DNA of 59,628 nucleotides, from contig JAKMXF010000345.1 in assembly GCA_024704765.1 (NCBI GenBank), positions 204,397-264,024 of the forward strand. The letters run 5' to 3'. Of this stretch, positions 1-34,032 are shown piece after piece. This stretch comes from Oopsacas minuta (lineage: Eukaryota > Animalia > Porifera). Every line of letters starts with the position of its first letter. The stretch's first letter is position 1. Both the position numbers and the translations under genes were made by a program. A model generated the notes under the pieces. It saw nothing but the letters and a program-made list of their open reading frames with translations. It had not been told where the DNA came from and made no database searches.

Positions 1-2004
1 GATATTTATAGGATTGTTCAATATGCCTCCACCTCCTATACTCCATATCAAGTTACTCAAGCTATAACTACTATCCATAGGATCACAAAGCAGTAATACA
101 TCCTCTCTGTCTATACCTACTGTATATGAGTAGGTAGTTTCTGTTACGGAAACTAAAGGAAAAAGAATACTAATAGATAATGATAGGCCACTATAACAAT
201 CTAGATTCCAAAGCGTCGTGCCAAAATGTTCGAAAATTGTGAAGGTATGGGTTCCCTATATATCTTCCAGACTTTTACCAACACTTCATAATCAATTCAA
301 TACTTTTATAACATATTTGATACCATGTTCCCCACCACTTACTTGTTGTAGTTTGATTGAACAATCCAATTGTATAACTATTGGTATCGTCTATTTGACA
401 CTGATAATATCCTTGTCTAGTATTGTATATGTCTAACCAACTGAATCCAGTTTGTGTGCTATTATATGTGGCTGTAAGCTCTTCACTATTTGATAGATTT
501 GAATTTTCTGAAAAGTTCCATACAATTGCATTATCCTCGTCTCCTCCACACGCTAACGTCAGTGATTGGTACAAGAAGGTGTTTCCACTCATTGGTTGAA
601 AGTCTAAACCTTCATTGATAAGTTCACCAAAGCTGGCACCTATATATGATGCACATAAATAATTTTCAGCTGAAAACCAAGGAAATTGCATGATTATATA
701 CTGACCTGTTGTTACAGACGAAGGCCTCTTGCATAGAAAAGCATTTATCGTGATTTCGCAGCTTACAGTTTCCCAATTACCCTCTCCAGTTGTGATTGTT
801 TCAACACAATCTTCATCATTCCCCGATGGTACCACACCTGTCCAGTTTGTATAACTATACACTGAACCATCAATCCAGGTATATGTTCCCTCTACACTCC
901 TATCATTCAATCCTATCCAGCAATTACTCACTGTATCAGGGATAATAGTGTATAAGTAATTATTCACTCTCTCTGTAGTAATACTAGTCAAGTCACCACC
1001 CCATACAGCACAACTAGATTGAGCATCTAACCAGTTGATTCCATCACTCACTTCATATAATCGATAGCAAAATCCATTATAGATCAGATCACATTCACTG
1101 GGTGTTGCTGGAAATTAAATACAATGAAATTTGCCTATATATTAGTCGACTTACTACCAATTGTCTAAGTATACAGTGACGTGTATTATTAATTAATTTA
1201 GCTGCTAGGAGCTTAAGGAGCTAAGGTTCTTCAATAATTCATTCGACATTCTATTTACTTCCTCGTACACCTATGGAATTGGTACTATGCAATACTACTA
1301 CTGTAATATAGAGTTAAGATATTAGCATTCTAGCATATTCATACAAATTATTCTTGATTAATAACTTACCAGGTTTATTGCAGAAGTAACAGTTTCTATC
1401 TAGGTCACAAAACCCATTTAGCCATCCGTTTGATATTGTAGTTCCATATTTGTACCTTAACCTAACACAATCATCATTCGTATCTGATCCAATGGGGTAT
1501 TGTGTCGGACCAGGAGTATTACCGAAATGTCTATAATTACTATTACTACCATCTACCCATACAAATGCATCAGCATTAGTACCAGCTTCACTCCCCCTAT
1601 CATTCAAACCTATGAAACAGGAAGTATGTGTCTGTATATCTTCTATAGTATAATACAATAAGCTATCCACTTGTACTGACCCGATTGAAGCAAGATGTCC
1701 TCCCCAATTTTTGCATTCTGTTTCAGCTTCTACCCAATTTATATTATTTTCTGCCAGCTTGAAGTAACTGAAGTCAGTATCATCAAATGTAAAAGTAAGG
1801 TCCGGAACCTGAGCTTGAGCTAAAGCATAACAAATACATTCAAATATGTGAATATCTAACTGATTATTCATGATAACTATTAGTCTAATACATTTACTAG
1901 ATGTTTACACATAAATTCTGCTTAAGGTACTCACCTGATTTGATTCTAATCAATGAACCAATTATCGCTAAGAATAATCCAATTTTATAACAGAGAGTTT
2001 TCAT
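1..2004 (-). CDS. Gene C (3'-partial): signal peptide + C-type lectin (CTL-B) + CTL-A + Ig-like 1 + Ig-like 2; member of the CTL/Ig receptor-PTP cluster, runs off the left edge
   Basis: Exons read from GT-AG boundaries: 2004-1935 (MKTLCYKIGLFLAIIGSLIRIKS, signal-peptide-like), 1819-1370 (CTL: WGGHLASI, CFIGLND, FVWVDG), 1107-706 (CTL: CWIGLND, WIDG, EDC, FLC), 639-343 (LACGG..W..QGYYQC), 152-<1. The complete internal exons are multiples of 3, phase 1-1. Confidence 0.85.
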
Positions 2005-2465
2005 GTTCAATTTCTTCCCGACTTTAGATTCTAATTGATGAGATATATTATCTACTGATTTCATTATATAGTCATACAATGTAGTTGAGAGGATAATTTA
2101 CAACTTCAGAAATTTGATATATCCTTTGAGTACATTGGAACACAAATTTGTTATTAGCAGAGTTTGAGTATTTGTTTTCTTGTAAATAGTTATTAGGTAC
2201 ATACACTGACACCATACATAGTAATTCTTCCCAAATTTTGTAGGTTGTCATGTCATATCCAATACGGGAAATGAGATATTAGTCATATTCCACATGAATA
2301 TAAATGTTATCCAACCATTCCATTGTAATCATTATTTGTAGAATTATCCACCTGTTGTATTACTTTATTGTGACGAGTGTTGTAACTTATTTTAAAATAG
2401 GAATTTATAACGTATTTTATATCTTATTTTGTTGTGTATTATATTTGCCAGTGATAGAATAACTT

Positions 2466-2655
2466 CACTAAAGTCTGCTTAATAGGGTCACATCTGGACC
2501 AGGTCATTTTGACCAGATTAAGTGGGATAAAGGTTTGTCCGATTAACTGAGTAATATAACACTATTTGAATGGTTCGGTTTCTAGCCTTGACCCCCGATT
2601 AACCAGGTTGACCAGATTAATCAATGGGATATTAATTGGATCCCGGAGTCTAGTG
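2466..2655. mobile_element. Degenerate MITE-like element (Tc1/mariner-pogo-type ends) between genes D and C
   Basis: Imperfect inverted termini (CACTAAAGTCTG / CGGAGTCTAGTG then TA) and internal CCGATTAA/CCAGATTAA repeats like those in the 45826-47023 element. Confidence 0.4.
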
Positions 2656-2972: not shown

Positions 2973-5900
2973 TTATTGAGCCTTTGAGAAGTATTCGTTC
3001 AATAGTTGGAAGCAGGATACAAAGTGTGTCTAAAGAAAAATGCAGGTAAGAATACAAGCAATGTTTTGTTGAGTGCCTTCCAAGAATAATGAATCTAGTT
3101 TTTTCGTAAAATGTTATTCAATCAATATTATTTGCATTTATATAATTATGCCTTATGTTAGCACAGCTTAAACCTCTTTAACTATGTAACTCAAATGACT
3201 ATTTTATTGTTCAGTATCTTACTAAGGTTAGTTGCCAAATACGAATTGATACCTTAGATTTTGACACGGGGTAACTGACCCTTCAATTCATTTTTTTACA
3301 GTTGTTCTACTTTAGTATAATTGATATAGATATCATCATATTTTTGCCCTCATTTTTACATGTGTTTATTGGTTACGTATATTTCTCCCCCATTCATACC
3401 AATTCATATATCTATATTATTGAACCTCAAATGTTGTCTGTTTGTTTGTTCGTTGTCAAGGAAAGGATTTAAGGTATGCAATTGCAAAATTGTCCAAAAT
3501 ATTTTTTCACTTTTGGGAACATAAAGTAATCAGATTTAAAGATTATGGCAGTATCATGTTTGCTACGGTTAAGATTGTGAGTTTATGTACTCGAGGACCA
3601 TGGGCTTGAGTGTGGACACAATGTCTTCGCAACCGCATAGGACGAGCAAGCGATGCGCACTCGTTATATATAAAATATGTATTGTAACGAACCAGAGTAG
3701 TCACGCTATTCATTCTATCATTCCTCAGCTTCTTGACTATGTGGAAGATGTCAATACGGCCCTTCTCTATGCTATCTTTAATAGCCCTATAAACGGCGTA
3801 CACTACACCACTCTTGCCTGCTCCATCATCACAGTGTATTATGATTGGGTGACTTGGAAACTTCTTACGAAACTCTAACATTATTTCTATAATTTCAACA
3901 ATACTTTCCAAGTTTGGCTCTTCCTTCTCGTTCCACTGATTCGTTATAATTTGGGTGCAAGGTTGGTTACCTTTGTCAACATTATTGTTGATGTCCAATT
4001 TATTGCGAATGAAATGAGGCGTTTTTTCACTTTCCTCACATGTAACATCAAACGAATCTGTTTGGATAGTTTCGCCATATTTTGGCCAGTAAACAATACG
4101 GTGTGATTTTTGGAGTTCAATGAGTTGTAGTTCTTTCTTTGAGCATAACATTACAACTAAACTAGGGGCGAGCATATATATCATTTGATAGAAATCTCGT
4201 TGTGTATGATTTGTGGGATTAATGGTTACAACTATTTCTCCGTTATCTAAAGAACTGGCATTAATGTAATCACCAGGCCAATCAGAGGCTTGTAATACGA
4301 TTCTGTTGCTGTCACATGGTAGGATATCTTTGATTGGATTCTTGTCCTCGTTGGAGGGTTCCAGTGCACTCTTACAAACTGGATCAAAAGCCTTTTCGCA
4401 TTGATAGTTAAGTTCACTGTATTGTTGGAAAAACACAGATACATAACCTTCAGTCTCTGATTGCATGTATAAATTGTATGTCTCTCTGAAGTCTCCTGTG
4501 GGAATTGATGTGCTCCCTAGTATCATTTCAAGGACTGATAGATAAATGAATTTATACTGAGAGAATGTTTGTACCATTTGGGGACGATGCTCCCTCATTT
4601 CATGGACGATACTGTAGATATTGATGGGTTTCGCCTGTTGAACTGCTGCTAAAAGATTGTATAGCGTAATGAACGTGCCTGTACGACCTACACCTGCAGA
4701 ACAATGTACTAAAATGGGTGATCTCGGTTTGACTAAACTTTCCTGAACTTTGGTAACGAACAACAGCAACTCATCATGAAGTGTTGGAACATCATGATCT
4801 GGCCATGCAGTGAAATGAAAGTGTTTTAATTGAGTAACCTTTCCCATCGAGTGAACACTCATCATCCTTATAATATAGCCAATCCTTATCTCTACTTTGT
4901 CTGCAATTATCTCGTATGGCCCACAACCAAACTTTTGGCCTTTTTTCAATGGGAAATATTGTTCGCATTTCTTACGTCCTGATTCAACTAGGTTAGTCAC
5001 CATCACGATATTTGCTACATTCTTTTCTACGATCATTTTCCAAAAATCTTGAAGTGTGTTTTCTTTTGGCGCTTGCGCCGCAATAAATTGTTCTTGGACA
5101 TGAACCCCAGGGATATGACTTGCATTAATATATCCTGTATTCGGATCTTCATCATCACTGAGTGTTAGGATTACGCGAGATTTATCGTAGGGGTACATTA
5201 ATTTGAAGCGATTCTTGATTTTGTTCTCTTCAATCATTGCATGTGTACAGGGATATCTATGTTCTTTTCCACCGAAACTTTCATATTCTTGCTGAAGCGC
5301 ACCTTCTCTTTGCCAAATCTTATTCATATGCATCTTGAAAGCATCTAATGGTATTGGTAACATTCTGGGATCGATAACCTTTGTAGATCTGACTGGAGAT
5401 TGAGTTAATTTACCGACATTTTGATAAAGATCGCTAATCTCAGGCTCTCTCACATTCGGTTTTGTATTTACGGTATCACTTACGCTGTATGCTTTGTTGT
5501 AGTTATCTGATACTGCAGCTTCTTTATATTCTGTAAAATCACTAGCCTTCATTGGTATTTCAGATGAACTAGCTTTAGGGTCATTGTTAAAATAACTGGA
5601 ACTTAACTTGGACATTTTGCCTCGATTTCTTACTATAAAATACATGAGGATAACACCAGCGATGATACATACGAGCAGTAATGATATTATTATCACTGGA
5701 ATTGCAATGACCGCTGCGTTTATCCCTTCAGTTACTGGTCTATCTAGAGGTATTATAGTGAAACGAGCTGTTGTATAGCTGATTCCAGTACTAGTTACTT
5801 GCATCAATGAAAAGTTCCCACTATTAGCATCGGTTAACTCTGATATAATGTAGGTCGACCTGGTTATTGTAGATGTTTCATCAGGAATTATCCAAACACA

Positions 5901-7568
5901 TTCAGATAGACTGCAAGTGAGTGAAATATTTTTTGTTCCCAATGTGATACTGATTTCTTGTGGAGATGGAAACATTGGATTATTTTCATCACTAAATGAC
6001 ATACTAGATTCTTCATAGGTGACTGTTATTGTAGTAGTATCTAGAAATTATGTAAATGTACTACAACCATAGACGTTATACAAATTTATATTGTGGATAT
6101 GTGCGGATCGGATGTCAAACACGTGAAACAAGCAATTTACCTTTGAGAGCTAGTTGTACGCTACCCAACAGTGTTACTGGACTCATCCTGTAGAAACAAC
6201 TCAATGTATGTGCACCAGCTCCCACGTCGTTGAATACTACAATGAAGAGTACTGGATTTGGATATTCAGCACTATATGTCAATGTGTCACCGTCTTCTGC
6301 ACCGTCTGTTGTCCAAAGGATATCATTATCTGCGACCATATTATCTGAATAATAGAGCATTGAGATGGTAGAATCCAGGGTATAATCAACTTGTTGAGAA
6401 GGGTTATCAAAGCTTGTTATTTCAACTAGAAATATAAATATTGAGTAATTTCAATGTCTATAAGTCAATTTGCTCAATAGTTACCTAGGGAATCTGTATT
6501 CACTATAAAGAATGTGTATACCATATCTGAACCAATTTCACAACTATAGTAACCATGTTCATTAGAACTCACAGTCAAACTACTAATCCCAGTTTCAAGA
6601 GAGAATGTTGATGATGAAGTTCTGTCAATTTTCATACCATCCTTCGTAGACATAAAATTCCACGATACACTATCTCCTATATTCGAGATTGAACACTGTA
6701 ACACCGTAGAGTCTTTTAGTACAATTGTTGAATCGTTTGAGATTGAATCAGTTAATGATGTTGAAATTGGATTTGTCACAAAATAACCTAAAGTAATTTC
6801 GTTATATATAATATGTTCAACTCTCGGTTGAAATATTGTTTTAAACCAACCATTTCGGATTAATTCTGCCTGAATCGCAATCACTTCAATTCTATCCCAG
6901 TCCATGATATAGAATTGATACAGTCCAAATAATTCATAATTAAGAGTTGCATAAGATATTGTTTGAGAATAAGAATATGTATCGTTTGGAAGTTTCCATC
7001 TCCCTTGTAGATTTGTTGAGATAGAGAAATCTTCTATTCCAATCAGAAGTTCGAACATATTCGTGTCGGGGTATACAGTACTGAAGGTTTGATCTGATGT
7101 AGATACTGTAATTATTGGAGCTACATAGAGCGTTTGAATGTAAAATAACTGAAAATAGACACTACTAAGCTATGTAAATTGTGTAGTTCCCAAGACGGAT
7201 TACTCAAATTTCACTAGAAATTTCATATTTCATACGGTCTATATGCCAGCCATATGGTCAAATATGTGTAGTTCTAAATTGCAGTTGTCTTCATGGTATG
7301 TTCAATAGGAATATACACTTACTATATATTTCTACTGTATTCAACTGGATGTTAATCCCATTACTAGCACAAGTCAATTGATTACTCTGTTCAGGTGAGT
7401 CACTGCTCCATTCAAAGAGATTTATAGGATTGTTCAATGTGCCTCCACCTCCTATACTCCATATCAAGCTACTCAAGCTATAACTACTATCCATAGGATC
7501 ACAAAGCAGTAATACATCCTCTCTGTCTATACCTACTGTATATGAGTAGGTAGTTTCTGTTACGGAAA
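2973..7568 (-). CDS. Gene D (5'-partial): Ig-like domains + TM + active tyrosine phosphatase D1 + D2 (receptor-type PTP)
   Basis: Exons 7568-7323, 7120-6851, 6787-6485 (canonical Ig C..W..YYSC), 6425-6141, 6040-3693 (Ig-like, TM AVIAIPVIIISLLLVCIIAGVILMYFIV, D1 with KNRF, YINAS, WPDHDVP, HCSAGVGRTG, QTFSQY; D2 with HCDDGAGKSG) and terminal exon 3029-2973 (THFVSCFQLLNEYFSKAQ*). The 5' part is lost at the NNN gap. Confidence 0.92.
3420..3680. repeat. Dispersed repeat (Helitron/HINE-like non-autonomous element) in the last intron of gene D
   Basis: 3424-3492 closely matches 43201-43270; ~3500-3665 matches the reverse complement of ~41806-41965. It carries a CTGT/TTGT microsatellite-like tract and a GC-rich GCGAGC/GCTTGC-type end. 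Family assignment is by resemblance only. Confidence 0.55.
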
Positions 7569-7572
7569 CTAA

Positions 7573-7575
7573 NNN
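7573..7575. other. Assembly gap (NNN)
   Basis: Three N bases. The right side is mid-D2 coding sequence of gene B; the left side is an Ig-like-2 exon with its acceptor, paralogous to 10145-10390 and 1-152. Confidence 0.98.
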
Positions 7576-20826: not shown

Positions 20827-21073
20827 AATACAATTATTCTCAATTTAATTTCTCCGTTTTATGCATACAAATATATGGGATAGATTATTAAGTAATTTGA
20901 CTGAGGTTTGCTGACTACCAGTATATGGAAAATTTAACTTTAGAGATATATTCTTACATTTATCTGTGTTGTAGGCAGTCAGAGAGTTAAATTACTCAAA
21001 TTACTATTAAATAATAGAATACTTGTGTATTGGAGAAGTTCTGTTTGGAAAGATATTATTTTATGGTGAAGGA

Positions 21074-21689: not shown

Positions 21690-23780
21690 GTAAATATTGT
21701 ATATATTACGTCTGTAGGTAAGCACTTCAGTAAATATTGTGGAATCCGCCTATTAGCAACCGTTTTCATCGACATGGCCATAAAGTGATGGTTTGTATGG
21801 TAATTTGTGTGTATAATAGCCCAATTGCTTAATAATAGGACAGTGCTTACAGGAAAAGTATTGGCTACACAACTAGATATATCTGTCGATCACGGTTGAA
21901 GATTTATGATCATAATGAAGAGGAACACAAATTTGTATTTGTTATTTGTATCTAAATTGCATTACGAAGAAGCCATAATAATGCAATTAATCTTTGGCTT
22001 GGATTCTGGACACATCCAACCTATATTGATAAACAACTTGGTTATTCAAACTGAGGTACACTATTTTATTTTGCTGGTTTGTCATCTTTGCCGATTCATA
22101 TACCACATTTACTCAAATAGTAGCCCCTCCCCGTACAATCATCATAATCGCCCGCTCAATTTGGGTGACGTACACAATCATTGCTGTGATGAAACTGACA
22201 CAATAACTACGATGGACTAACATAATGACTTTCATATTAATCATATACACTGGCTAACTTGATACTAGAATCTTATAAATGTAACCTAAAACTTTTCATT
22301 ATCTTCTCTAATTTATAATTCCATGATTTATATTGCCACGTTCAAAAAATGGAATATTCCCTATCCTATAGGAAGAAACAATGATTATGAACCTGTTATC
22401 CATCTTCTATGATTGCATTTACGTTTCCATATTTTTCCTGCTCATGGTTGTGTGGGCACGAATATGCACTTTTTTAGACACTTTGTGAAAGTGCACCCAT
22501 ATGGTAGCACATTAGTAGGTTATTATTGGATCATTATGCTCTGCTAACGTACGTAAATATTAATTGATGATGCAATTATTAGCAATTATTAAACAATCTT
22601 TTCATGATAATTTAGTTAACATACACTTAGCTATGAATTTCTTAACTAGAAATTCATTGTTCGTCTTATCTGGAAATTCATAGTAATCATGTTTGTATTA
22701 AGAGCTTTCACTGTATTTCTCAAATCCACCAAAATTTGGTAAGCAAGTAGAATATGAAACTGATTCACATGACAAACAATCATAACTATCATTAAACATG
22801 TCTCATTGTCTATCAGAACACAAGAATATACAACTAGTAATTTATGTATATACGTATATGTATAACAACAAAAACAAGAAACATAATAGAAAAGTATCCA
22901 CAAATATTTAAACATCACGATGTATATTAGAGATGAATAGAACAATATTCGTTTAGAAGCGAATAGCAAGTTGTATAACATGCCTAGAAGAGGAATAGAT
23001 AATAGAAATATAGTGTGAAGAATTGGTATAAGGGTATTATAGATGGACTCGCGTTCTGTCGAATTATAATTACTTATCGAATAGAATATGGAAACATTCA
23101 AACTAGTCATACAAAGTAATACTAGATAATTGGGCTGTAAAATGTGACAACATTGGTGGACTTGAAGGGAACGGTTTGCCCTGCACTTCCACAGTTTTCC
23201 CGTTTACCCCACAAAGTGATGTTATTGCATTATTCGATAGTTCTCTATCTTATGGATACGTTGTAAAATTTTAGAGTTCTATCATTATTTAGCACTTTGA
23301 CTAGCATTCCATAGCCATGTCTTCAAACCATCTAGCCATAAGGGCAAAGTACACTCGAATAGTTATATCAATTATTGTATAAATAGTATCTATTACATGT
23401 TTTTAACATGATGTATACATTAAATAGCCCTATTTGTAATGTTTTTATGATATTTGCACCCAAACGTTAATTTCCCCACACCGCTGTGAAGTAGATTTGG
23501 CCCGCCAGAGATCTACACACGATCCAGATTCGCAGTAAAAAATATCAAATAGTTCCGACCACTGGGAGAAGTATAAGAATTGTAAGGTATACTTTCCCTT
23601 TGAATAGATAGGTATAGAAATATTCGCAAGGAATTAAAATAGAAAACTGATACCGAGAATCCAAAAAGAATCTTTGAGATATTTCCGTAGTGGTGTGAAA
23701 TCATTGAAATATATCGTCAAAACAATATATTTTCATATAAACGAAGATAGGAATGTATATGACAGTTATCAAATACTTAC

Positions 23781-26700
23781 CAAGGTAGGAACATTGTTCA
23801 TTCTTTGTTTACGCAAGTTCTTAACAACATTGAAGATGTTAATTGATTTTCTTATGTTAAGTTCTCTGATAGAATTCAACACTGTCATTATGATGCCAGT
23901 CTTAGAGATACCATCTTCACAATGTATAATAATAGGAACATTATTGGAGTCTTGTTTCTGTTTCATAATTCTGTTCAGAAGGGCGATAGCACACACTACA
24001 TCATTCACTGTACCATCTTCATTCCATATTGGAGATATACACTGAGTGAATGAGTGTTCCTTTCCTGCTAAAGTATTCTTCAAACATATTTCCTGTTTCA
24101 CAAATGCATTCTTTTCAGTCGAATTTATCAAAGTAGAAACAAAAGGTCCACAATTGATAGGTTCATCCTTCTTAGGCCAGTAACAGACACGATTAGATAT
24201 TCCACTGAGTATCTTAGCTTTCTCCTTTCTTGTAGTCAGCATTATCACCATACTAGCTTCTGTTTGATAGATCATTTGTAGGAAATCTAGATGTGTCTCT
24301 TTAGTTGGATTGATGGTAGCAATGAATCGATAACTTTCTAACCAACTAGCATTGATAAAATTACAGTCAAAGTGTGTAGAATCTAATACAACCCTGTTTT
24401 CATCAAATGGTAGAATGTTTTTAATTGGATTCTTTTGAAAATTTTCCTCTTTCAATGCCTCTCTACTTTCTGGTACAACAGCCTTCTTAGATTCTTCATT
24501 TAACTTTTCAAATTCCACAGAAAATAATGAATCATTTCCTATTCCAGATTCTACATACTGTCCATACATTGTAGGAAATTCTGTTATTGGTATGAATTTT
24601 GCTATGAATCTTTCTTCCTTTACCGAACTAATGGATGGGTAGTTTTCATAAGATAGCTCTTCCTTCATTTCTAAATAGCCACTTTTCTCTTTTTTTGTTG
24701 CATTTTGGTTTGGAATATTTTCACGTTGAATATTTGACAAATTAGCATAACTTCGTTCATTGGGATTAGTGGGTGCGTCTAGAGTAGTTAATGATGTCTC
24801 ATCTACCGTCATATACTCAGGATTTGTATTTACAGATGAGAGATCTATGCACTCTTTAGGTTGTGGATTGATTTCCGATAAATTTGCATAACCAAGATTA
24901 CTTTCATTACCTGTTATATAGGATTTGGAGGGTTTAGGACGTTTAGATACTTTTGCCTTTGTTGGTCTTCTTCTCTTTACGTGTAGAAAGATGAATATTG
25001 GAACTAGAATACTTGTAGCTACAATTATACATGTGATCGATAATAGCACAATGATTATTATCGGTAGTAATGCACTGTTTGCTGCTGCTTCTGTTAGAGT
25101 TTGTATAGAAATATGTACTGTGGTATATTCTACGCCAGAACTTGTAGAACGAACCAATGAGAAAGTCTCTTTAAAGTTAGAAGGTATTTCAGATATGCTA
25201 TATGTAGATGCAATGATTGTATCTTTTTCATTTGATATCATCCATACACATTCAGGTAGAGTGCAGGTTAACGTAATATCTTTGGTTCCTTGATGTATAC
25301 TGATTACTTGTGGAGATGGAAATAATTCATTACTAATATCACTTGTGGTAAAGGTGTACCCTTCATAACTGATTGTTACTTCTACTGTATCTGTAAATAT
25401 ATGATAGATAATTTAATGATTTAATATATAATATCAACAAACCTTTGATTGCTAGCTGGAGATTTCCTAGAGAAGTGACTGGACTCATCCTATAGAACGA
25501 AGTTATTGTATGTAAACCTGCTCCCACATTAGAGAATACTGCAATTAATAACACTGGATTTGGGTACTCAATACTGTATTCCATATTTTCCCCATCGTTT
25601 ACAGTGTCTGTTGTCCAACGTATTTTAGTATCTGGAATTTCTGTGTTTGAATAGTAGAGTCTATCAATAATAGAACCAACAGTATAGTTCACTTGTAAAG
25701 GAATGTTAAAGTTGGTTATTTCTTCTAGAAAAACACACACAGTAAATATGGATCGCATATTGGTATATTCCCTGTGTAGAATGCGAAGATATTACTATTA
25801 AATCGCTATTACCTATTCCATCAATTGTTACAGTAATATTGATCTGTATTGCACAGACTTCTAGCCCATCCCAGTTGGTAATATATAACTTATATACGCC
25901 ATTATTCTGTGATGTGAAAGTTGAAATTGCTAGAGTAAAGAATTGATAGCTTCCATCAGGTAGCATCCATCTACCCTCAATGTTATTTGAAATAGAAATG
26001 TTCTTGATACCAATAGGAATTTCTATATTATTCATGACCGGGTAAACTGATGAAACTTTTCCAATAATGAGATCACCATATTGGAGGATTATTTGTGGTA
26101 CTAGAGGAAATAATGTGAGGATAATTGGATAACAATATTACTTTACGTAGTAAGACTACCTCTATAATTAATTTTGTTTTTGATATTTCTTCTCCATCTC
26201 TCGAACAATTGATGCTATAGTAACCGATTGACTTATCACCAATCATTTTGTATATGTTGATTGGATTGGGAAGAGTATCACTACCCTCTACAGACCATAT
26301 TAACAGAGACAGGTTACCACTATCCATCGGATCGCATAGCAGTAATACATTCTGTCTGTCTACTCCTACTGTATAGTTGTATGTAGTTTCAGATACAGCA
26401 ACTAGATGGGAGATTAGAGTGATAAATGAGTTAGGCTAATCAAAGAGTGCCAAACATGCTGACCTGTTGTTAAGGATGGATTGTATAACCCAATCGTATA
26501 AGTTAATGAATTGGCTTGACACTGATAATATCCTTGTTGGGTAATATCAGCTGCTAGTCAGCTCCATCCAGCTTCCATATTCTCATAGGTTGCTAGTAGT
26601 GTTTGACTAGGTGATAGATCTGAATTCTCTGAAAATATCCATATAATTTCAGTTTCCTCTTCTCCTCCATAAACTAATGTACGTGAAGTGAACAAGAATG

Positions 26701-29700
26701 TGTTTTCACTAATTGTTTTAAAGTATAATCCCTCGTTAATTAGATGCCCAAATCCTCCTACTAAAGCATGAAATAGATATATTCACATAATCAAATACAG
26801 TGGAGTTCGCTTACTAGCAAGTCGAATTTTGCACAAGAAAACTTGCTAATAGGCGCACTTGCTAATAGAGCAACTCAATCAATTTGATAAATACTATTGT
26901 TGTATCTACACGTACATACGTGTATGAGATAATATAATACGTAAAAGCAACCACAATTTCCTCTAAATTGAAGAATGTAAATTAGGTTTACTACTATATT
27001 ACAGAATAATTTCATTATAACAAGTTCTTGTTAGTAAACGAACTAAAGGTTCCTTTATTAAGTTATTAGCAAGTCGTGTTTTTGAGAAAACTTGCTTATA
27101 GGGCGAGCTTGCTAATAAGTGAACATAATTAATGCAATTTGGGGCCATTGTGAACCTTAAAACAAACTTGCTATTAGGCGAATCTTGCTAATAAGGCTAT
27201 TGCTAATAGACGAACACTACTGAAGCTAATATGTATGTGGATGAATAATATACTGACCTGATGTTACATTTGAAGGTCTTTTGCATAGAAAAGCATATCT
27301 CGTCATTTTACAGCCCAGGGTGCCCCAACTACCCTCTTCAGCATTGATGATTTCAACACAATCTTCATCACTGACAGATGGTGCACTTCCTGTCCAGTTC
27401 ATATGATTATATACTAAACCATCAGTCCAGGTATAAGATCCATCTCCATCTCTATCATTCAATCCTATCCAGCAATTACTCACTGTATCAGGGATAGTAG
27501 TGTATAAGTAGTTATTCTCTCTCTCTGTAGTAATACTAGTCAAGTCACCACCCCATACAGCACAACTAGATTGAGCATCTAACCAGTTGATTCCAGTACT
27601 TACTTTAAATAATCGATAGCAAAATCCATTATAGATCAGATCACATCCTTGTGAGTTACCTATCAAATATGGAAAATATCTTGAGTTTGGTGGGTTGAAA
27701 GAACAGAATTACATTTGACATATATTTCTCACATTCTTGCATATAATTAATAGTTTCATTGATAATAATCTATTATTTGGTTGTCACAAAATCACAGTAA
27801 TGTAATGAAGTGAAACGAATTGCCATATAACGAAATCGGTATTTCCGATCACTTACCTGATTGACTGCAGAAATAACAACTTCTACGGGTTTGACAACCT
27901 CGATTAATCCAACCTGTTGATAATACTCCTGCGCGCTCCTGTATCTGAATCTAACACAGTCCCATGGAGCATTTGAATCTCCGGGATTTATTCCAATAAG
28001 TGAATCGAAGTTCCTATAAGTACTTGCACTACCATCTATCCATACAAATGCGCTAGCATCAGTACCAGCTTCTACATCTATATCATTTAGACCTATAAAA
28101 CATGAAAAAGCATTATCTAAATCTGTTATGCTATAGAACAATAAGCTATCCTCTTCTGCTGACTTGATTGTAGCAAGATTTCCTCCCCAGTTGATGCAAT
28201 AGAGTTGTGCAGTTATCCAGTTTATGACTGGAGAAATTGTAAAATATCCAAAAGTGTTATCATCTAATATAAATTCTTCTTCTGGGTTCCTTTCTAACAA
28301 ACAAGATTATTATTATATTCATCATCAAATTTTGATATCCACGAGTGTAAAATTAATTACATATATCATGTACTATTACCTGTAATAGCTGGTGAAGATG
28401 AAAGAGTAATTTGTATAGCACACACATCAACTCCATCCCAGTTGTTAATATAGAATTCGTATAGCCCAGCATTTCCTTCCATGAAATTATCAATTGATAT
28501 ATTAGATCGAGTGGGGTTTGCAAGCCCTAGAACAGTCCATTTTCCAACAATATTGGTAGAGAGAGTAATATCTTGTGTTGATAATGGGATAGCAAGCTCA
28601 TTCATAGCTGGACAGACAGCTGTGAATTTACTAGCACTGATGCTACCAATGTGAATTGTTAATTCTGGAACTAAATAAACACAATATTCATATAGATATA
28701 GTGGAACCTACAATGTAACACATGCAAATGGAGACTAATACGATCTTTCCGCATCATGTAACCGTTACTAATATGTTCCCCTGTACACTACATATCAGAT
28801 AATGAAACAATAATTATTGAATAAATAGTTACCTTGCAAGCTGATAAAGTTTGAATATATTATACTTGAATCTCTGACACAATTTATTCCAGTAGATTGT
28901 TCTGGTAAAGTATTCCTCTCATTGTATATGTTGATAGGATTCAGGAAATCTCCACTACCTGTTAGAGACCACTTCAGCATACTTAAATCATCACTGACAA
29001 CAGGATCGCATAACAGTAATACATCCTCTCTATCTACTCCTACTATATATACATATGGAGTACCTTCTGTTGCAACTAAATGGAAGAATGGAATTTCAAT
29101 AGATTAATAAGTGGGGTAAGAACAGGTTTCTGCGCGGGCCGCATTCTAATTCCAAATTTTATGCGGGCCGTATTGACCTACGACTACGTTCCATGTCCTA
29201 ATTTATTAGAGAAACTCTACTAGCGAATTGAAAAATAAAACAATAATTATGCATAATAATTAACAAATAGTATTCAAATTTTCCATGGGGACGGAATTTC
29301 CGAATACGTGAGAAGAGTAATACAGTGATCAAATAATTTGAGTACTCAAACAACTTAAGCCAGGCGGGCCGGTTCAAGATCACAAGCGGGTCGGATCCGG
29401 CCCGCGGGCCGTAGCTTGCCTACCCTGAATAATAATATATAGAAAATATCACACAAAGATATACTCACCGGTTGTTAATGAATTATCATATAAACCAATC
29501 GTATAAGTTACTGAACCGACTTGACACTGATAATATCCTTGTTTGGTAATATCAACTGCTAACCAGCTCCATCCAGTTTCCGCATTACTATATGTTGCTG
29601 TAAGTACTTCAATATCTGATAAATCTGAGTTTTCTGAAAAATTCCATATGATAACATTGCTCTCTTCTCCTCCAAAAGCTAATGTACGTGAAGTGAAAAA

Positions 29701-32700
29701 GAATTCGTTGTCGCTAATTGTCCCAAAGTCTAATCCTCCATTAGTAAGTTGTCCAAATCCCACAGCTAAAACATGATATGTATTAATATATTGTATCCAA
29801 TAGCTACTATTTATATGGAATTGTAGCATTCGCATTATACTGACCTGTTGTTACAGATGAAGGTCTCTTGCATAGAAAAGTATTTATCGTGATTTCGCAG
29901 CTTACAGTCTCCCAACTACCCTCTCCAGCTCTTATTATTTCAACACAATCTTCATTACTAAAAGATGGTTCACTCCCTGTCCAGTTTGTATGACTATATA
30001 CTGAACCATCAATCCAGGAATATATTCCATCTCCATCTCTATCATTCAATCCTATCCAGCAATTACTCACTGTATCAGGGATAATAGTGTATAAGTAATT
30101 ATTCTCTCTCTCTGTAGTAATACTAGTCAAGTCACCACCCCATATAGCACAACTAGATTGAGCATCTAACCAGTTGATTCCAGTACTCACTTCAAATAAT
30201 CGATAGCAAGATCCATTATAGATCAGATCACATCCTTGTGAGTTACCTATCGAATTAAGTAACTAGATTGAATAAAAGTATTTTCAACAGTTTAGTAAAT
30301 TGAAAGAACAAAATACATTATATTATATTTTCACAGTTCAGTGTTTTCCTTCTTATTTGTATTATTTTAGTGTGACCATTGTCCAGGATTTTATACATCA
30401 AATACAGGATTCTCGAGATCATTATTTTGATTAGTCGGATGTGAAATTATGTGATTAGAAATCAACTCCCTGAGATATCGAATTTTACCCACAATATACT
30501 ATTGCTACACATAATACATCATAACTCATTTTAGAACCTGCATGCACTAATATATATTCTTGCTATCACATAGCTATGTCTCTAACTTTTCTGAAAAATA
30601 CACATCAATTCTTAAACTGGTTACCAATACCAGCGGCAGCTTTGCAATGTTCAATGAGGTCTCACGCTATTTCTATTACAAAATTGAACATCCATGTATA
30701 TTTTTATATAAATGCTTGTCAAATAATCATAAATATATTGTACAGGATCTTGTCAAGGACTTTGAAACTTATCTCCAGGAAAATTCCAGGAATTTGAATG
30801 TATGATGCTCCAATATACTGGGATTAGACCTAAATATGCTGGCCAACGGAAATGTAGTTTTGAGGCTTATTTTTACTACACTCATTTACCTACTTTGTTG
30901 CAGAAGTAACAAGACCTAGTAAGTTCACAACGTCTATTAATCCAGCCGGTTGATAATACTCCTGCTAGATTGTTATATCTGAATCTAACACAATCACAAT
31001 TAGGAAATTTATCTGAGGGACTTGGTATACCAGGATTTGGATCGAAGTTCCTATAAGTACTGTTACTACCATCTACCCATTTAAATTCACTAGCATTCGT
31101 ATCAGCCTCTACATCTATATCATTTAGACCTATATAACATGAAATATAGTCTGTATCAGGTCCTTGTGTACTATAAAACAATAAGTTGTCTTCTTCTGCT
31201 GACTTGATTGTAGCAAGATTTCCTCCCCAGTTATTGCATTCTACTTCAGCATCTGGCCAATTTATTGGGCTCACTATGAAGTATCCAAAGATCGTATCGT
31301 CATATATTAGAGAAATATTTGGAGTTGTTGCTTGAGCTAAAGAGAGAGATTTAGTACAGTAGTTTGAAATTGACCAACAGTTTGTGACATATACCTACAA
31401 TTTTTCTGATTTTTTCGGGACATCTCCCTATTTTCTCTAATCAGGTTGGCAATACTCGTATTGATATATCCATAGCCTACTAAATATAAGGCCTAACAGT
31501 AAAAGTACTAGGGATGCAGGAGTAGCTGCAAGTATTTATATACATGGTTTCTTTTGTATAGAAAAGGTGCATCTTGGCACTAATAAATGTAATGTACATT
31601 TGTAGAACATCAAATTTTACACCAATAAATGCTAAAACTTTCAGGAATGCGTCAAAATATGTGTCTAGTAAGCATTTATTTAGCAAAATATGTCATTCTT
31701 TGATGACTTGTAGAACGTTAAATATTGCTTATACCAACTCAAAGTGAACTAATGAATGATTTATAGATACTTATATAAAAAATGTCAAAAAATTGTCATT
31801 CAAAAGTTGCCTCGTTGTTGAGTTACGGTAAAGACCATGGATGACAGTCTTTTAGGCATATTCAATGGGGGACCGTCGTTAGTCCTACTCTACATGTAAG
31901 CGTTAGTCCCAATTCTGATTTGTAGGTGTTAGTCCTACCTATAAAATAGCTATTTTATCTTTTTCATGAGTAGATGTTAGTCGTACTCTAAATACTGGCA
32001 ATAGTCCTACTCTTTTCAGGAGTAGACGTTACTAGCATTAGTCTTTGTTTCACAGTTATGGCAACCAAGAATATGAGCAGTTATTTTTCCACTAATTGGA
32101 TGCCAGTGATTGATTTTCATGGCATTAGCATTGGATCTTGGACCTGAGAGTTTGTTGGGAGTTTCCCTGACGTCCCTACGTGTTACCAAGTGCCTATATA
32201 ACTCACCAAGGTGATTGAATTGGAATTAACTTGGATTATCTAACTTAATTGCATTAGCTGAGAATATGAGCATTATAACATTAGCTATCAAATGTTCAAG
32301 AATGACATATTTTACTAAATTATTACATATTTTGACACATTACTGAAAATTTTTAGCATTTCTTGGTGTAAAATTTGATGTCCTACAAAAATGTAATACA
32401 TTTATTCAGGCAAAATGCATTTTTCTGCAATAATGAAACCCTGTGTATAAATTCTTTAGGCTAATACTGCATCCCTGGTGCCAAAACTTCCAGTTACGGT
32501 TAGCCCTCATGTTTAGAAGGCTATGATATATCATATATGTTTAGGGTATATGCATTTCTGGGACCGTCACGACTCGTAAATTAGGTACGCTAACTAATAA
32601 AAGTATTAATTATCTATATTATCAAAACTTAATTATTATACATGTATGTTTGTTTGTTTGTCCACTTTGTATTATAATAATATGGGATGAAGACCTGCGT

Positions 32701-34032
32701 AGATAATATTGGGAATAATATATCCTCCAGTTGACGATATTGGAAAGTAAACAATTACATTGGGGTAATCGAGTATGCCAAATCAGAATTTCACACTTAC
32801 GAATTAACCATATGCAAATTTATTCGTTGTTTTTATGAATACAAAGTAAACAAATGCTTGAAATATTCATTTATTAATTCAATTTTTAAATTTATACTTT
32901 ACCAACATCGAGGCACGAAGTGCCGAGTCGCGAGCAAGCGAAGCGGCTAGTATTAAAATGTAACCACAACTTGATAAAATACATTAGCATTATTTCGAAC
33001 TATGGATAAGAATAATTGAATTACAAAACGATCTAAACTTGAGTCAAATTTTGATTATCAACTACTGTGGGATATATCATAGTTGCAGGGACGTCGCCAC
33101 GGGGGGCAATCCCCCTGGTAAACCCTTGCCCCCCTTTGGAATTTCTTTTCCCCCCCTAGATGAAAATCGTGGCGGCGTCCCTGCATTATCCCTGGAGTTT
33201 GACCTATGATCCTGTGGAAAAATTGCTAAATCCAGGGAATATATGGGAAATTTCGGGCTTTTGTCCTGATAAATGAGGGAAAAATCATATAATTAGCATA
33301 GAAAATCCAGGGATTTCTCGGATAATATCCAGAAAAACAGTACAAGAGCTGGTAAATATTGTATATATCAATTCTATGTAACAGGGAGGACGATGTAGCT
33401 TATTATCCAAATATATTCGAGATAATACTATGGGCAACATCATAAAACCCACAAAATGTCTAACTTAGTCAAGAGGATGATAAAATTTGTAAAATTCCAT
33501 GAAAAATCTTAATTTTAAGCTCTTTTTATAAGGTCATCTTCCCTGAATACTTCTAAAAGTTTAACTTTGCAAGATGAGTAAAAAACATGTGGTGTCTGCA
33601 AGTCCATGTACAAAGAAGAATTGGTATATAATTCTGCAAATCATTCATCATGAAATTACCGCGAAATTTATCAAGCCATTGTGTGAAATAGTAATGATGA
33701 TGAATCGAAAATAGTACATACCCATTAGTAGCGTAAGATGGAGTGTGCATTAGTTAATTCCTGACACCTAACATATATTTAGTTTCTCTATGAATTGAAC
33801 AAGGTTTAGAAGTCTGTATTAGCTATTGCAAGGTGATAGATCGAATGCTTGCCAGGTCGAGTCGAGTTTCGTACTCGATCGATCGGATCGGGTTATGGAA
33901 AATGGTGACAGGTTCTATCTCCCATAACATCTATTTCTGGTCTAGAATACATTTGTAATACTTACCTGATTTAGTCAGAATTATTGTAGCAATTATCAGA
34001 AAGAATAATACAACTTTACAATAGAATTCCAT
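23781..34032 (-). CDS. Gene A: signal peptide + 2 x [CTL-B, CTL-A, Ig1, Ig2, Ig3] + 2 Ig-like + TM + Tyr-motif tail + D2-like pseudophosphatase; second module carries disabling lesions
   Basis: Exons: 34032-33966 (MEFYCKVVLFFLIIATIILTKS); 31336-30890, 30246-29845, 29765-29469, 29075-28833, 28670-28380; 28293-27857 (437 nt, 1-nt deletion), 27659-27258, 26760-26464 (in-frame TGA at 26560-26558), 26401-26160 or -26147, 26100-25813; 25724-25443; 25390-23781 (open; TM, tail, D2 with HCEDGISKTG). The terminal exon was not found nearby. Confidence 0.8.
26798..27222. mobile_element. Tc1/mariner (pogo/Tigger-like) MITE in a gene A intron
   Basis: Imperfect TIRs CAGTGGAGTTCGCTTACTAGCAA / TTGCTAATAGACGAACACTACTG, left TA, many internal CTTGCTAATA repeats. 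Confidence 0.7.
29111..29427. mobile_element. hAT (Charlie-like) MITE in a gene A intron
   Basis: Right end GGCCCGCGGGCCGTAGCTTGCCTACCCTG with GCGGGCC subterminal repeats; degenerate left end; flanks ATTAATAA / AATAATAA form an 8-bp TSD with one mismatch. Confidence 0.6.
31462..32534. mobile_element. Foldback-like element with ~240-bp imperfect inverted arms in gene A intron 1
   Basis: 31462-31700 aligns to the reverse complement of 32298-32534 (e.g. ACATCAAATTTTACACCAA, AAAATATGTCATTCTT). The interior holds about five degenerate TTAGTCCTACTCT units at 31879-32015. Confidence 0.7.
33084..33185. mobile_element. Small GC-rich MITE
   Basis: TIRs TGCAGGGACGTCGCCACG / CGTGGCGGCGTCCCTGCA (1 mismatch); no clear TSD. 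Confidence 0.65.

What the first reader, a model, noticed from the sequence alone, without database searches (positions are those of the whole stretch)
1..34032. Candidate paired-receptor system: tandem C-type-lectin/Ig receptors with alternative active-phosphatase or Tyr-motif/pseudophosphatase endodomains
Seen: at least four same-strand genes share one modular ectodomain (tandem CTL pairs plus Ig-like domains), but the endodomain comes in two forms. D has an intact D1 and D2. A and B have no D1, only a Tyr-rich tail and a D2-like domain. Established: classical receptor PTPs use FN3, Ig, MAM or carbonic-anhydrase ectodomains, and paired receptors (KIR, Ly49, Siglec, LILR) are clustered paralogs with similar ectodomains and opposite signalling; cnidarian Alr allorecognition genes are clustered Ig receptors with ITAM/ITIM-like tails. 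Inference: this is a lineage-specific immune or self/non-self recognition cluster in which phosphatase-bearing and phosphorylatable receptors act as a pair. I do not recognise this architecture from any described family, but I cannot search for it.
Basis: partly seen in the sequence, partly recalled or inferred. Interest (0 to 1): 0.92.

Follow-up and report, generated by a model that had tools for sequence, protein, structure and literature searches.

The report
Glass-sponge lectin receptors, two tails
A glass-sponge gene cluster encodes surface receptors with the same lectin/Ig-like outer part joined either to an active tyrosine phosphatase or to an ITAM-like tyrosine tail plus a dead phosphatase domain, so it looks like an undescribed sponge counterpart of vertebrate paired immune receptors, though what it does is untested.

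Summary
All genes are on the minus strand. They are built from repeated [C-type-lectin a, C-type-lectin b, three beta-sandwich exons] modules, a transmembrane exon and one of two endodomains:
- Gene D (2,973-7,572): a motif-competent D1 plus a degenerate D2.

Caveats:
- An NNN assembly gap (7,573-7,575) hides S2's 3' end and D's lectin exons.
- S1 carries a 2-bp frameshift and a TGA stop.
- A fifth copy is a relic.

The D1-less class is not decay. More than 100 members, in Oopsacas minuta and in other sponge-derived assemblies, form one clade nested in D2. Their tails keep conserved YxNL and YxxL-x7-YxxI motifs. Ectodomains have moved between the two classes repeatedly: S2 matches D at 85-99% nt up to the endodomain exon, then matches S1. 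Lectin loops diverge 3-4 times faster than the flanking intron. An RNA-like run shows spliced S2 and D.

The paired-receptor reading fits the evolutionary pattern, but the signalling and the immune or allorecognition role are inferred. No paper describing the family was found. First readers of this scan noted the same family on other pieces of this genome.

The parts
1..2004 (-). Gene E, 5' part only; it runs off the left edge. Signal-peptide exon 1936-2004 (MKTLCYKIGLFLAIIGSLIRIKS, then G|gtgagt), CTL-a about 1370-1813, CTL-b 706-1107, c about 278-700, d 1-255.
   Evidence: CTL-b+c is 89% aa identical to S2 module 4.
2973..3026 (-). Gene D last exon (..HFVSCFQLLNEYFSKAQ, stop TAA). It matches the C-terminus of O. 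minuta P0052.
3693..6047 (-). Gene D endodomain exon. It holds the membrane-proximal h domain, TM 5631-5717, the juxtamembrane region, D1 (WPD 4785-4805, P-loop HCSAGVGRTG 4677-4706) and D2 (WPK 4080-4091, P-loop HCDDGAGKSG 3807-3836). The donor after ..TTL is GTTCGT, which is weak.
6118..7572 (-). Gene D ectodomain exons that are visible: d 7294-7572 (cut by the gap), e 6848-7169, f 6477-6784, g 6118-6450. The 63-nt in-frame intron 6785-6847 is seen spliced out with GT..AG ends in run X4.
7573..7575 (.). Assembly gap (NNN). It hides the rest of S2's D2-type domain, S2's last exon, the intergenic DNA and D's upstream exons.
   Evidence: Loose end at 7576 reads on as the D2-type domain.
7576..8868 (-). 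It holds the h domain, TM 8447-8533, a Tyr tail with GYANL twice, the ITAM-like YIDL-x8-YMTI (8267-8320), YIEI and YTPMS, then a D2-type domain (WPKK 7634-7648) cut off by the gap.
   Evidence: Intron 8869-8964 is spliced out with GT..AG ends in X4.
8942..11899 (-). S2 module 4 plus membrane-proximal exons: CTL-a 11401-11832, CTL-b 10942-11343, c about 10532-10900, d 10083-10406, e 9667-9942, f 9318-9596, g 8965-9249. The stretch from d to g is 85-99% nt identical to gene D, introns included.
11990..18734 (-). S2 modules 1-3, each CTL-a, CTL-b, c, d, e. Module 1 is 16130-18734, module 2 14042-16099, module 3 11990-14015. Exons are mostly phase 1-1 with lengths divisible by 3.
19395..19464 (-). 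Tentative S2 signal-peptide exon (MGTNFHQVVLLFTISASLSGILT, then G|gtaac).
   Evidence: Pattern search only; not conserved at the DNA level with the other two signal-peptide exons.
20531..20858 (-). Relic copy C. Only the last ~50 residues of a PTP domain (20709-20858) and the last exon (20534-20590) remain. No upstream PTP or ectodomain homology.
22927..22983 (-).
23781..25412 (-). S1 endodomain exon. It holds the h domain, TM 24978-25073, a Tyr tail (the first ITAM Tyr is Cys: TGC at 24,849 against TAC in S2), and a complete D2-type domain (WPKK 24168-24182, P-loop HCEDGISKTG 23895-23924). Donor GTAAGT.
25366..28306 (-). S1 module 2 plus g: CTL-a 27776-28306 with a 2-bp GC insertion at about 27,929-27,932 (frameshift), CTL-b 27258-27647, c 26417-26782 with a TGG>TGA stop at 26,558-26,560, d 26102-26401, e 25813-26100, g 25443-25724.
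28369..31394 (-). S1 module 1: CTL-a 30890-31330, CTL-b 29845-30234, c 29469-29765, d 28809-29075, e 28380-28670. Against S2 module 1 the a-b intron differs at 7.7% of sites, while the CTL-a long loop has pN 0.26-0.32.
33966..34032 (-). S1 signal-peptide exon (MEFYCKVVLFFLIIATIILTKS, then G|gtaagt). It is similar to gene E's.

Best explanation
The locus is part of a large receptor family specific to glass sponges (Hexactinellida). The window is from Oopsacas minuta or a very close relative.

Shown:
- The ectodomain is a string of [CTLD-CTLD-three beta-sandwich] modules encoded by mostly phase-1 exons.
- It is attached to one of two old endodomain classes.
- Class D is a receptor tyrosine phosphatase with a motif-competent D1 and a degenerate D2.
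- Class S has lost D1. It keeps a D2-derived domain predicted to be inactive (P-loop Arg>Lys, no general-acid Asp). Between the membrane and that domain it carries a conserved tail of about 150 aa with two YxNL motifs, a YxxL-x7/8-YxxI pair at ITAM spacing, and YExI and YTPMS.
- Recombination has repeatedly moved ectodomains between the classes, so neighbouring D and S genes often present nearly the same outer part.
- The lectin long loops are hypervariable relative to the flanking intron.

Inferred mechanism:
1. A multivalent ligand (a glycan or protein on microbes, food particles or other sponge tissue) clusters the receptors through the lectin loops.
2. In S receptors, Src-type kinases phosphorylate the tail. 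That recruits tandem-SH2 Syk-type kinases to the ITAM-like pair and Grb2-type adaptors to the YxN sites, giving an activating or engulfment signal.
3. D receptors that recognise the same ligand bring D1 phosphatase activity into the same cluster. This sets the threshold or ends the signal, or it primes Src kinases as CD45 and PTP-alpha do.
4. The D2-type domain kept by S receptors probably serves as a docking surface for substrates or for D-class phosphatases, not as an enzyme.
For: Architecture and motifs.

Class S is old, large and under constraint:
- 107 single-domain K-type proteins among those retrieved.
- One clade with SH-aLRT 100 that includes O. minuta P0205 and P0211. It is nested in D2 and is sister (support 92) to the D2 domains of the lectin-RPTP subfamily.
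- Tail motifs are conserved in 63-95% of 59 aligned members that are only about 50% identical overall.
- ITAM spacing occurs in 48 of 93 tails against 3.8 expected by shuffling, and in 2 of 50 class-D juxtamembrane regions.
- Tail dN/dS is 0.38 between S2 and S1.

Ectodomain exchange between classes:
- S2 matches D at 85-99% nt, introns included, down to about 8,850, then matches S1 at 81-94%.
- In L001, from another assembly, an S gene and the next D gene share 86-89% nt over about 5.5 kb.
- In the O. minuta GenBank assembly, annotated P0258 (S-like) and P0052 (D) lie 371 bp apart. Their ectodomains are 75% aa identical over the first 250 residues and 91% nt identical over 791 nt.
- On a tree of the membrane-proximal domain the endodomain label needs 16 changes, at least 6 of them forced. 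On the D2 tree it needs 1.

Hypervariable lectin loops: pN 0.26-0.32 against intron p 0.077.

Expression: run X4 has exon depths of 10^3-10^4 against 55 in an intron, and GT..AG joints at S2 8869-8964 and D 6785-6847.

Partners exist in principle: Syk-related kinases are reported in sponges (PMC9486129).
Against: - No functional data of any kind. Ligand, phosphorylation and partner binding are all inferred.
- The kind of run X4 is not on record. Its contigs sum over near-identical paralogs, so expression of these particular copies is not proven.
- S1 in this window has two disabling lesions and lacks the first ITAM Tyr. S2 and D are both cut by an assembly gap, so no gene here is verified end to end.
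- Class D also has conserved Tyr motifs, which blurs 'opposite signalling'.
- Pairing is not 1:1.
- YxxPhi and NPxY motifs are also endocytic sorting signals.
- The lectin domains lack the canonical Ca2+/sugar triad.
- In the variable loop patches pS is also raised (0.20-0.50). Patchy gene conversion could therefore explain them as well as positive selection does.
Confidence: 0.5

Rival explanations
1. Class S receptors are endocytic or phagocytic cargo receptors. On this reading the tail tyrosines (YxxPhi: YIDL, YMTI, YIEI; NPxY: NPGY, NPVY) are clathrin-adaptor sorting signals, as in the C-type-lectin receptors DEC-205, mannose receptor and ASGPR. They would not be phosphorylation-dependent ITAM or Grb2 sites. 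Class D would be a separate signalling branch that happens to share ligand-binding modules.
For: The motifs are present in S2. Sponges feed by engulfing bacteria, and lectin ectodomains suit particle capture. The sorting-motif reading is textbook knowledge, not tested here.
Against: What is conserved is the two-Tyr spacing (48 of 93 against 3.8 by chance), two YxN motifs and an acidic context (KEYIxL, YMTIDETS). That is more than a sorting signal needs. Keeping a D2-type domain in more than 100 copies is not explained. The two readings are not exclusive, because ITAM-type receptors also drive phagocytosis.
Confidence: 0.2
2. The family consists of cell-adhesion or aggregation receptors for tissue cohesion and fusion of the syncytial sponge body, comparable to homophilic R2B RPTPs. 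Class S copies would act as dominant-negative or scaffolding partners that modulate class D phosphatases through D2-type contacts.
For: Ig-like and lectin modules are typical adhesion modules. From memory, a C-type lectin was proposed as an aggregation factor in the glass sponge Aphrocallistes vastus (Gundacker et al. 2001); this was not checked here. D2 pseudophosphatase domains recruit substrates in PTPRK (PMC9640194, seen).
Against: Adhesion molecules are usually conserved low-copy orthologues. Here there are hundreds of fast-shuffling paralogs with hypervariable lectin loops, which fits diversified recognition better. The conserved ITAM-like tail is not needed for a dominant-negative role.
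Confidence: 0.15
3. The D1-less genes in this window are non-functional leftovers of unequal crossing-over in an ordinary expanding RPTP cluster, and the apparent pairing is a by-product of tandem duplication.
For: S1 has a frameshift and a stop codon and has lost one ITAM Tyr. A relic copy lies next to it. S2-versus-S1 dN/dS in the D2-type part is 0.7.
Against: This may hold for S1 alone but not for the class. Class S is monophyletic, has more than 100 members with open reading frames, occurs in several assemblies and has conserved tail motifs. S2's exons are all open, and its g-to-endodomain junction is seen spliced.
Confidence: 0.08
4. S2 and D are one gene with alternative 3' exon sets, or two haplotypes joined by a scaffolding error at the NNN, rather than two neighbouring genes.
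For: D has no lectin exons or signal peptide in the window, and its visible ectodomain is 85-99% identical to S2's. The junction between them is an assembly gap.
Against: A run contig continues S2's D2-type domain past the gap. In the ungapped loci L001 and L006, every endodomain has its own lectin exons and, in L006, its own annotated start. The S2 and D copies differ by 1-15%, introns included, so both sequences exist.
Confidence: 0.05

Closest known systems
Classical tandem-domain receptor PTPs, closest by sequence to LAR-type PTP-sigma/LAR (R2A) and PTP-alpha/epsilon (R4)
   Same: Class D has a single TM, D1 with an intact HC(X5)R, WPD and Q loop, and a degenerate D2. The best solved relatives are PTP-sigma (E 2e-100), PTP-alpha (8.5e-100), LAR and PTP-epsilon. 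It has a juxtamembrane YxN motif; PTP-alpha's Grb2-binding Tyr, recalled from memory, is a comparable site.
   Different: The ectodomain is made of C-type-lectin-like pairs plus Ig-like or beta-sandwich domains in up to four modules. This is not among the R1-R8 ectodomain types reviewed in PMC10815196. No large ESM-Atlas cluster near P0052 combines Lectin_C with Y_phosphatase (a lead only).
Vertebrate paired receptors (KIR, Ly49, Siglec-5/14, CEACAM1/3, SIRP)
   Same: Clustered paralogs, near-identical ectodomains on different signalling tails, repeated ectodomain exchange between the two classes, and fast-evolving binding loops. PMC3533184 and PMC2832619 were seen only in the listing.
   Different: Here the non-ITAM arm carries a covalently attached phosphatase instead of an ITIM that recruits SHP-1/2. 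The ITAM-like motif sits in the receptor's own tail rather than on a DAP12 or FcR-gamma adaptor, and it is followed by a pseudophosphatase domain. The ratio of classes is not 1:1.
Dectin-1/CLEC-2 (hem)ITAM C-type lectin receptors controlled by CD45/CD148
   Same: A C-type-lectin-like ectodomain, an ITAM-type tail, Syk signalling, and receptor PTPs that dephosphorylate the ITAM (PMC10815196). This is the closest functional analogy.
   Different: In vertebrates the phosphatases have unrelated bulky ectodomains and are excluded from the contact zone. In the sponge family the phosphatase shares the ligand-binding ectodomain, so it should be drawn in rather than excluded. There is no sequence relationship beyond the domain families.
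Invertebrate allorecognition clusters (Hydractinia Alr, Botryllus FF/FcoR, Amphimedon aggregation factors)
   Same: Lineage-restricted, clustered, rapidly diversifying receptor genes, some with ITAM or ITIM tails (PMC12582321).
   Different: Different domain families. No polymorphism or fusion/rejection data exist for the sponge family.
Receptor pseudophosphatases and D2 pseudophosphatase domains (PTPRN/IA-2, PTPRU, PTPRK-D2)
   Same: A membrane receptor whose only PTP-fold domain is predicted to be inactive. D2 domains are known to act as substrate-recruiting modules (PMC9640194 and 10.1101/805119).
   Different: The class S domain derives from D2 by loss of D1. It is not a mutated D1-type domain as in IA-2 (from memory). 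It is also combined with an ITAM-like tail.

Membership tests
Classical receptor-type protein tyrosine phosphatase (class D gene) | PTP domain with catalytic Cys-X5-Arg P-loop, WPD general-acid loop and Q loop in D1 | tested here: met
   HCSAGVGRTG, WPDHD and QMVQT..QY are present in ORF 3543-6002. Pfam Y_phosphatase E 5e-117. The pTyr-loop reads KNRF instead of KNRY.
Classical receptor-type protein tyrosine phosphatase (class D gene) | Tandem D1-D2 arrangement behind a single transmembrane helix | tested here: met
   Two full-length domains. TM at 5631-5717.
Classical receptor-type protein tyrosine phosphatase (class D gene) | Signal peptide and complete ectodomain on the same gene | tested here: inconclusive
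   D's 5' part lies in the assembly gap. It is met in relatives: L001 gene 12105-20474 and O. minuta P0052.
R4 subtype (PTP-alpha/epsilon), the name given by automatic annotation | Short, domain-less glycosylated ectodomain | tested here: not met
   Lectin_C and Ig-like domains are present in the ectodomain.
Paired receptors | Clustered paralogs with highly similar ectodomains but different cytoplasmic signalling parts | tested here: met
Paired receptors | Opposite (activating versus inhibitory) signalling by the two forms | not testable with these tools
   Only motif-level evidence: an ITAM-like tail against an active-looking D1. Class D also has Tyr motifs.
Paired receptors | Both forms recognise the same or related ligands | not testable with these tools
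   Inferred only from 75-99% ectodomain identity.
ITAM-bearing receptors | Cytoplasmic YxxL/I-x(6-8)-YxxL/I | tested here: met
   S2 has YIDL-x8-YMTI. The motif occurs in 48 of 93 class S tails against 3.8 by shuffling. It is not met in S1, where the first Tyr is Cys.
ITAM-bearing receptors | Phosphorylation-dependent binding of a Syk-family tandem SH2 | not testable with these tools
   Syk-related kinases are reported in sponges (PMC9486129). No binding data exist.
C-type lectins (Ca2+-dependent carbohydrate binding) | CTLD fold and signature | tested here: met
   Pfam Lectin_C E 2e-17 for CTL-b and 1e-6 for CTL-a.
C-type lectins (Ca2+-dependent carbohydrate binding) | EPN/QPD plus WND Ca2+/sugar-binding residues | tested here: not met
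   By inspection, the loop reads SEPS, SAPT, VVPS or NPPT and the WND position reads WET. These are lectin-like domains, not proven lectins.
Immunoglobulin superfamily domains | Ig-like beta-sandwich fold | tested here: inconclusive
   e domain: AF2 pLDDT 74, Foldseek probability 1.0 but E about 2e-3 and TM about 0.4 to IZUMO1, NCAM and CD4. f and c: weak Ig_3 hits. g: no clear match. d and h were not modelled.
IA-2/PTPRN-type receptor pseudophosphatases | Single inactive domain of D1 type | tested here: not met
   The class S domain groups with D2 domains, not D1.

The most novel reading that the evidence does not exclude
Glass sponges have a true paired-receptor recognition system that arose independently of the vertebrate ones. 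Hundreds of lectin/Ig receptors exist as matched versions. One signals through its own ITAM via Syk. The other carries the counteracting tyrosine phosphatase directly on the same ligand-binding ectodomain. Recombination keeps re-matching the ectodomains, and diversifying selection acts on the lectin loops. The system would be used for discriminating self from non-self tissue, or symbionts and food from pathogens. That would place ITAM-based, balanced activating/inhibitory recognition in sponges and add a new RPTP subtype.
Probability: 0.3. Interest if true: 0.9.

Novelty: new variant of a known kind. Interest (0 to 1): 0.78.

Why it matters
Three points would matter if the reading holds:
- It would be a receptor tyrosine phosphatase subtype with a lectin ectodomain that is not in the R1-R8 scheme.
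- It would be a natural case in which D1 was lost and replaced functionally by an ITAM-like docking tail while D2 was kept. That bears on what D2 domains are for.
- It would show the genomic signature of paired immune receptors in sponges.

The family also gives concrete, testable candidates for recognition receptors in glass sponges, where no allorecognition or microbe-recognition genes are known. It offers a simple system for asking how co-clustering a phosphatase with an ITAM receptor shapes signalling thresholds.

Tried and rejected
- One alignment of all ectodomain exon pieces against O. minuta P0234 for structure prediction. MAFFT stacked all the beta-sandwich fragments on top of each other, so the alignment was unusable. 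Per-domain alignments were used instead.
- tRNA scan and Rfam scan of the very high-depth stretch at about 3461-3566. Both found nothing; it is an interspersed repeat.
- DNA similarity between the regions upstream of the three genes, to find shared 5' exons. It worked only for S1 against E. S2's signal exon rests on a pattern search.
- Gene-wide dN/dS on ectodomain exons. Values of 0.3-0.9 give no gene-wide signal of positive selection. Only local loop patches stand out, and their raised pS means gene conversion is an equal explanation.
- Independent origin of the O. minuta P0258 D1-less form. It falls outside the main S clade, but the AU test does not reject a single origin (p 0.32).
- Literature searches for this architecture or for ITAM or paired receptors in sponges. 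No paper describing it was found. The library does not cover subscription journals.
- The weak Pfam hit of the TM+tail to SIT, an SHP2-interacting adaptor (25 bits against a 27.6 cut-off). It is below threshold and was not used as evidence.
- Automatic splice-site picking. It is right for most exons but wrong for some donors: the g exon ends at 8965 according to the RNA joint, not 8947. Exon ends in 'parts' are therefore approximate.

Full report
NAMING. All genes lie on the minus strand. I call them S1 and S2, with S for the single-domain, D1-less class. D is the phosphatase gene at 3.0-7.6 kb, E is the partial gene at 1-2,004 and C is a relic at 20.5-20.9 kb.

WHAT IS IN THE SEQUENCE.
- The window is AT-rich, about 34% G+C.
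- Minus-strand ORFs translate into recognisable domains. Pfam finds Y_phosphatase twice in the 819-aa ORF 3543-6002 (E 5e-117) and once each in the ORFs at 7580-8830 and 23769-25241. It finds Lectin_C in two exon types.
- All-vs-all blastp of the ORFs shows a repeated five-exon module: CTL-a, CTL-b and three roughly 100-aa exons c, d and e.
- After the modules come exons f and g, then one long exon that encodes a last extracellular domain (h), the transmembrane helix and the whole cytoplasmic part except a short final exon.
- S2 has four modules and S1 has two.
- Most predicted exons are phase 1-1 with lengths divisible by three. One junction, S2 g to endodomain exon, is confirmed as phase 1 by a spliced contig.

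THE TWO ENDODOMAINS.
- D has D1 with HCSAGVGRTG, WPDHD and a Q loop. Its D2 has HCDDGAGKSG and WPK, so it has lost the P-loop Arg and the general acid.
- D's closest solved relatives are PTP-sigma, PTP-alpha, LAR and PTP-epsilon.
- S1 and S2 go from the TM through a Tyr-rich tail of about 150 aa straight into one PTP-fold domain with HCEDGISKTG and WPKK, all in one ORF. A D1 cannot be spliced in without cutting that exon.
- The linker before this domain (FP.MYQQYVESGIG.DSLF) corresponds to the D1-D2 linker of D. The change therefore looks like a clean loss of D1.

CAVEATS IN THIS WINDOW.
1. NNN at 7,573-7,575 interrupts S2's PTP-fold domain, and the sequence resumes in the middle of D's d exon. 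A contig from a sequencing run reads on from 7,576 as ..NAFVKQEI, the expected continuation. The gap is therefore real. It hides S2's 3' end and D's lectin exons.
2. S1 has a 2-bp GC insertion in the module-2 CTL-a exon and a TGG>TGA stop in the module-2 c exon. The first Tyr of its ITAM-like pair is Cys (TGC against TAC). S1 is probably a young pseudogene, unless those in-frame exons are skipped.
3. Copy C is a stump.
4. The Ig-like label is only partly backed. The e domain models confidently as a beta-sandwich that matches Ig domains of IZUMO1, NCAM and CD4, though with modest scores. Domains f and c give weak Ig_3 hits. Domain g gives no clear match.
5. The lectin domains lack the EPN/WND sugar-binding residues (read).

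ORGANISM.
- The nearest named proteins are from the glass sponge Oopsacas minuta.
- A locus from its GenBank assembly is up to 91% identical to parts of the window over 3 kb and has the same G+C.
- The window is therefore from O. minuta or a very close relative.
- Further relatives at about 50-66% aa identity come from three unnamed ENA assemblies. These are presumably other hexactinellid samples.

THE D1-LESS CLASS IS A REAL, OLD FAMILY.
- A search with S1's endodomain ORF returned more than 100 single-domain ORFs of 480-600 aa that cover it end to end.
- Among all retrieved proteins, 107 carry the HC.DG..KTG signature in a single domain.
- On a tree of PTP domains the class S domains form one clade (SH-aLRT 100) that includes O. 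minuta P0205 and P0211. The clade is nested inside D2 domains and is sister (support 92) to the D2s of the lectin-RPTP subfamily, which contains D and O. minuta P0052.
- D1 was therefore lost before these lineages split.
- The tail is conserved across members that are only about 50% identical overall: GY[EA]NL (69%), KEYIxL (69%), NPxYMTIDETS (95%), a second YxNL (78%), YExI (63%) and YTPMS (83%).
- The YIxL...YMTI pair has ITAM spacing in 48 of 93 tails, against 3.8 expected from shuffled tails and 2 of 50 class D juxtamembrane regions.
- A profile of the tail finds only 16 representative clusters among 1.84 billion proteins. All are from this family.

ECTODOMAINS MOVE BETWEEN THE CLASSES.
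- A three-way DNA alignment shows S2 is 85-99% identical to D, introns included, from the d exon to the start of the endodomain exon at about 8,850. There it switches to 81-94% identity with S1. S2 is thus a mosaic of a D-like ectodomain and an S1-like endodomain.
- In L001, from another assembly, a class S gene and the next class D gene share 86-89% nt over about 5.5 kb of ectodomain. They then diverge.
- In the O. minuta GenBank assembly, the annotated proteins P0258 and P0052 are encoded 371 bp apart on the same strand. P0258 is SP-CTL-Ig-TM-Tyr tail-one D2-type domain. P0052 is SP-CTL-Ig-TM-D1-D2. Their ectodomains are 75% aa identical over the first 250 residues and 91% nt identical over 791 nt.
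- On a tree of the membrane-proximal domain (66 S and 28 D proteins) the endodomain label needs 16 changes, at least 6 of them forced by well-supported branches. On the D2 tree it needs one.
- Pairing is not strict. Class S genes also neighbour each other.

VARIABLE BINDING LOOPS.
- Between S2 module 1 and S1 module 1, the 614-nt intron between the two lectin exons differs at 7.7% of sites.
- The long-loop region of CTL-a has pN 0.26-0.32, and a second patch has pN 0.27.
- pS is also raised in those patches. Micro-conversion from other paralogs is as good an explanation as positive selection. Either way the canonical ligand-binding loop is the most variable part.

EXPRESSION.
- Four runs of one sample hold the window.
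- Three have flat depth of about 70 across exons and non-coding DNA and look like DNA.
- X4 has depths of 10^3-10^4 on exons against 55 in D's last intron. It carries two joints with GT..AG ends on the minus strand: 8,869-8,964 (S2 g to endodomain exon) and 6,785-6,847 (D e to f).
- This supports transcription and splicing of both classes. However, the kind of run is not on record, and contig depth sums over near-identical paralogs.

INTERPRETATION.
- Shown: the architecture, the two classes, their age and size, tail conservation, ectodomain exchange and loop variability.
- Inferred: class S tails are phosphorylated and recruit Syk-type and Grb2-type SH2 proteins. Syk-related kinases are reported in sponges (PMC9486129).
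- Inferred: class D receptors bound to the same ligand bring a phosphatase into the cluster.
- The closest functional analogy is Dectin-1/CLEC-2 with CD45/CD148 (PMC10815196). There is a twist: here the phosphatase shares the ligand-binding ectodomain, so it should be recruited rather than excluded.
- Whether the phosphatase damps the signal or primes Src kinases is open. Class D has its own conserved Y, YxN and YEEI motifs.
- Whether the ligands are microbial, dietary or allogeneic is unknown.

NOVELTY.
- Six literature searches found no description of lectin-ectodomain RPTPs, of D1-less ITAM-plus-D2 receptors, or of paired receptors in sponges.
- The proteins exist in public O. minuta annotation under generic names.
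- I rate it a new variant of known kinds (RPTPs and paired receptors), well supported at the genomic level and open at the functional level.
- First readers of this scan flagged the same family on several other pieces of this genome. Those notes are unchecked and were not used as evidence.

Noticed in passing
window 3461-3566 (copies at 41900-41962 and 43189-43270): A short interspersed repeat in D's last intron has depth 4x10^4 to 1.3x10^5 in all four runs, against about 70 for the flanks, and contigs break at its edges. It gave no tRNA or Rfam match.
   Followed up: partly
window 35447-36805 (+) and 40145-41203 (-); L002:18304-19269: NHL-repeat / six-bladed beta-propeller ORFs border the receptor cluster here. 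An ORF with a faint NHL Pfam hit also borders a cluster of the same family in another assembly, so this may be a conserved neighbourhood or a second expanded family.
   Followed up: no
L002:13785-15962 (-): A 725-aa ORF with a RAG1_RNase_H (Transib-type transposase-like) domain lies directly beside a class S receptor gene in a related assembly.
   Followed up: no
window 47351-58613 (-): A multi-exon 5-oxoprolinase gene (Hydant_A_N, Hydantoinase_A and Hydantoinase_B domains). It is an ordinary housekeeping gene and marks the right-hand end of the cluster region.
   Followed up: partly
window 31462-31700 and 32298-32533: An inverted repeat of about 240 nt at 75% identity inside S1's 2.6-kb first intron, possibly a MITE-like insertion. 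Other pieces of that intron match 42.9-43.4 kb.
   Followed up: no
window 20531-20858: The relic copy C keeps a good GTGAGT donor and a 118-nt last intron, whereas the last introns of the intact genes are about 650-800 nt.
   Followed up: partly
L006:1-6871: The O. minuta annotation holds a 2,484-aa protein with Lectin_C plus two PTP domains just upstream of the P0258/P0052 pair. Multi-module class D genes are therefore annotated as single genes there.
   Followed up: no
If true, enzyme-bearing against ITAM-bearing twins may be a wider theme in this sponge.
   Followed up: no
window 8447-8330 and 25073-24900 (TM plus start of tail): A sub-threshold Pfam hit to SIT, the SHP2-interacting transmembrane adaptor (about 25 bits against a cut-off of 27.6), in both class S genes.
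   Followed up: no
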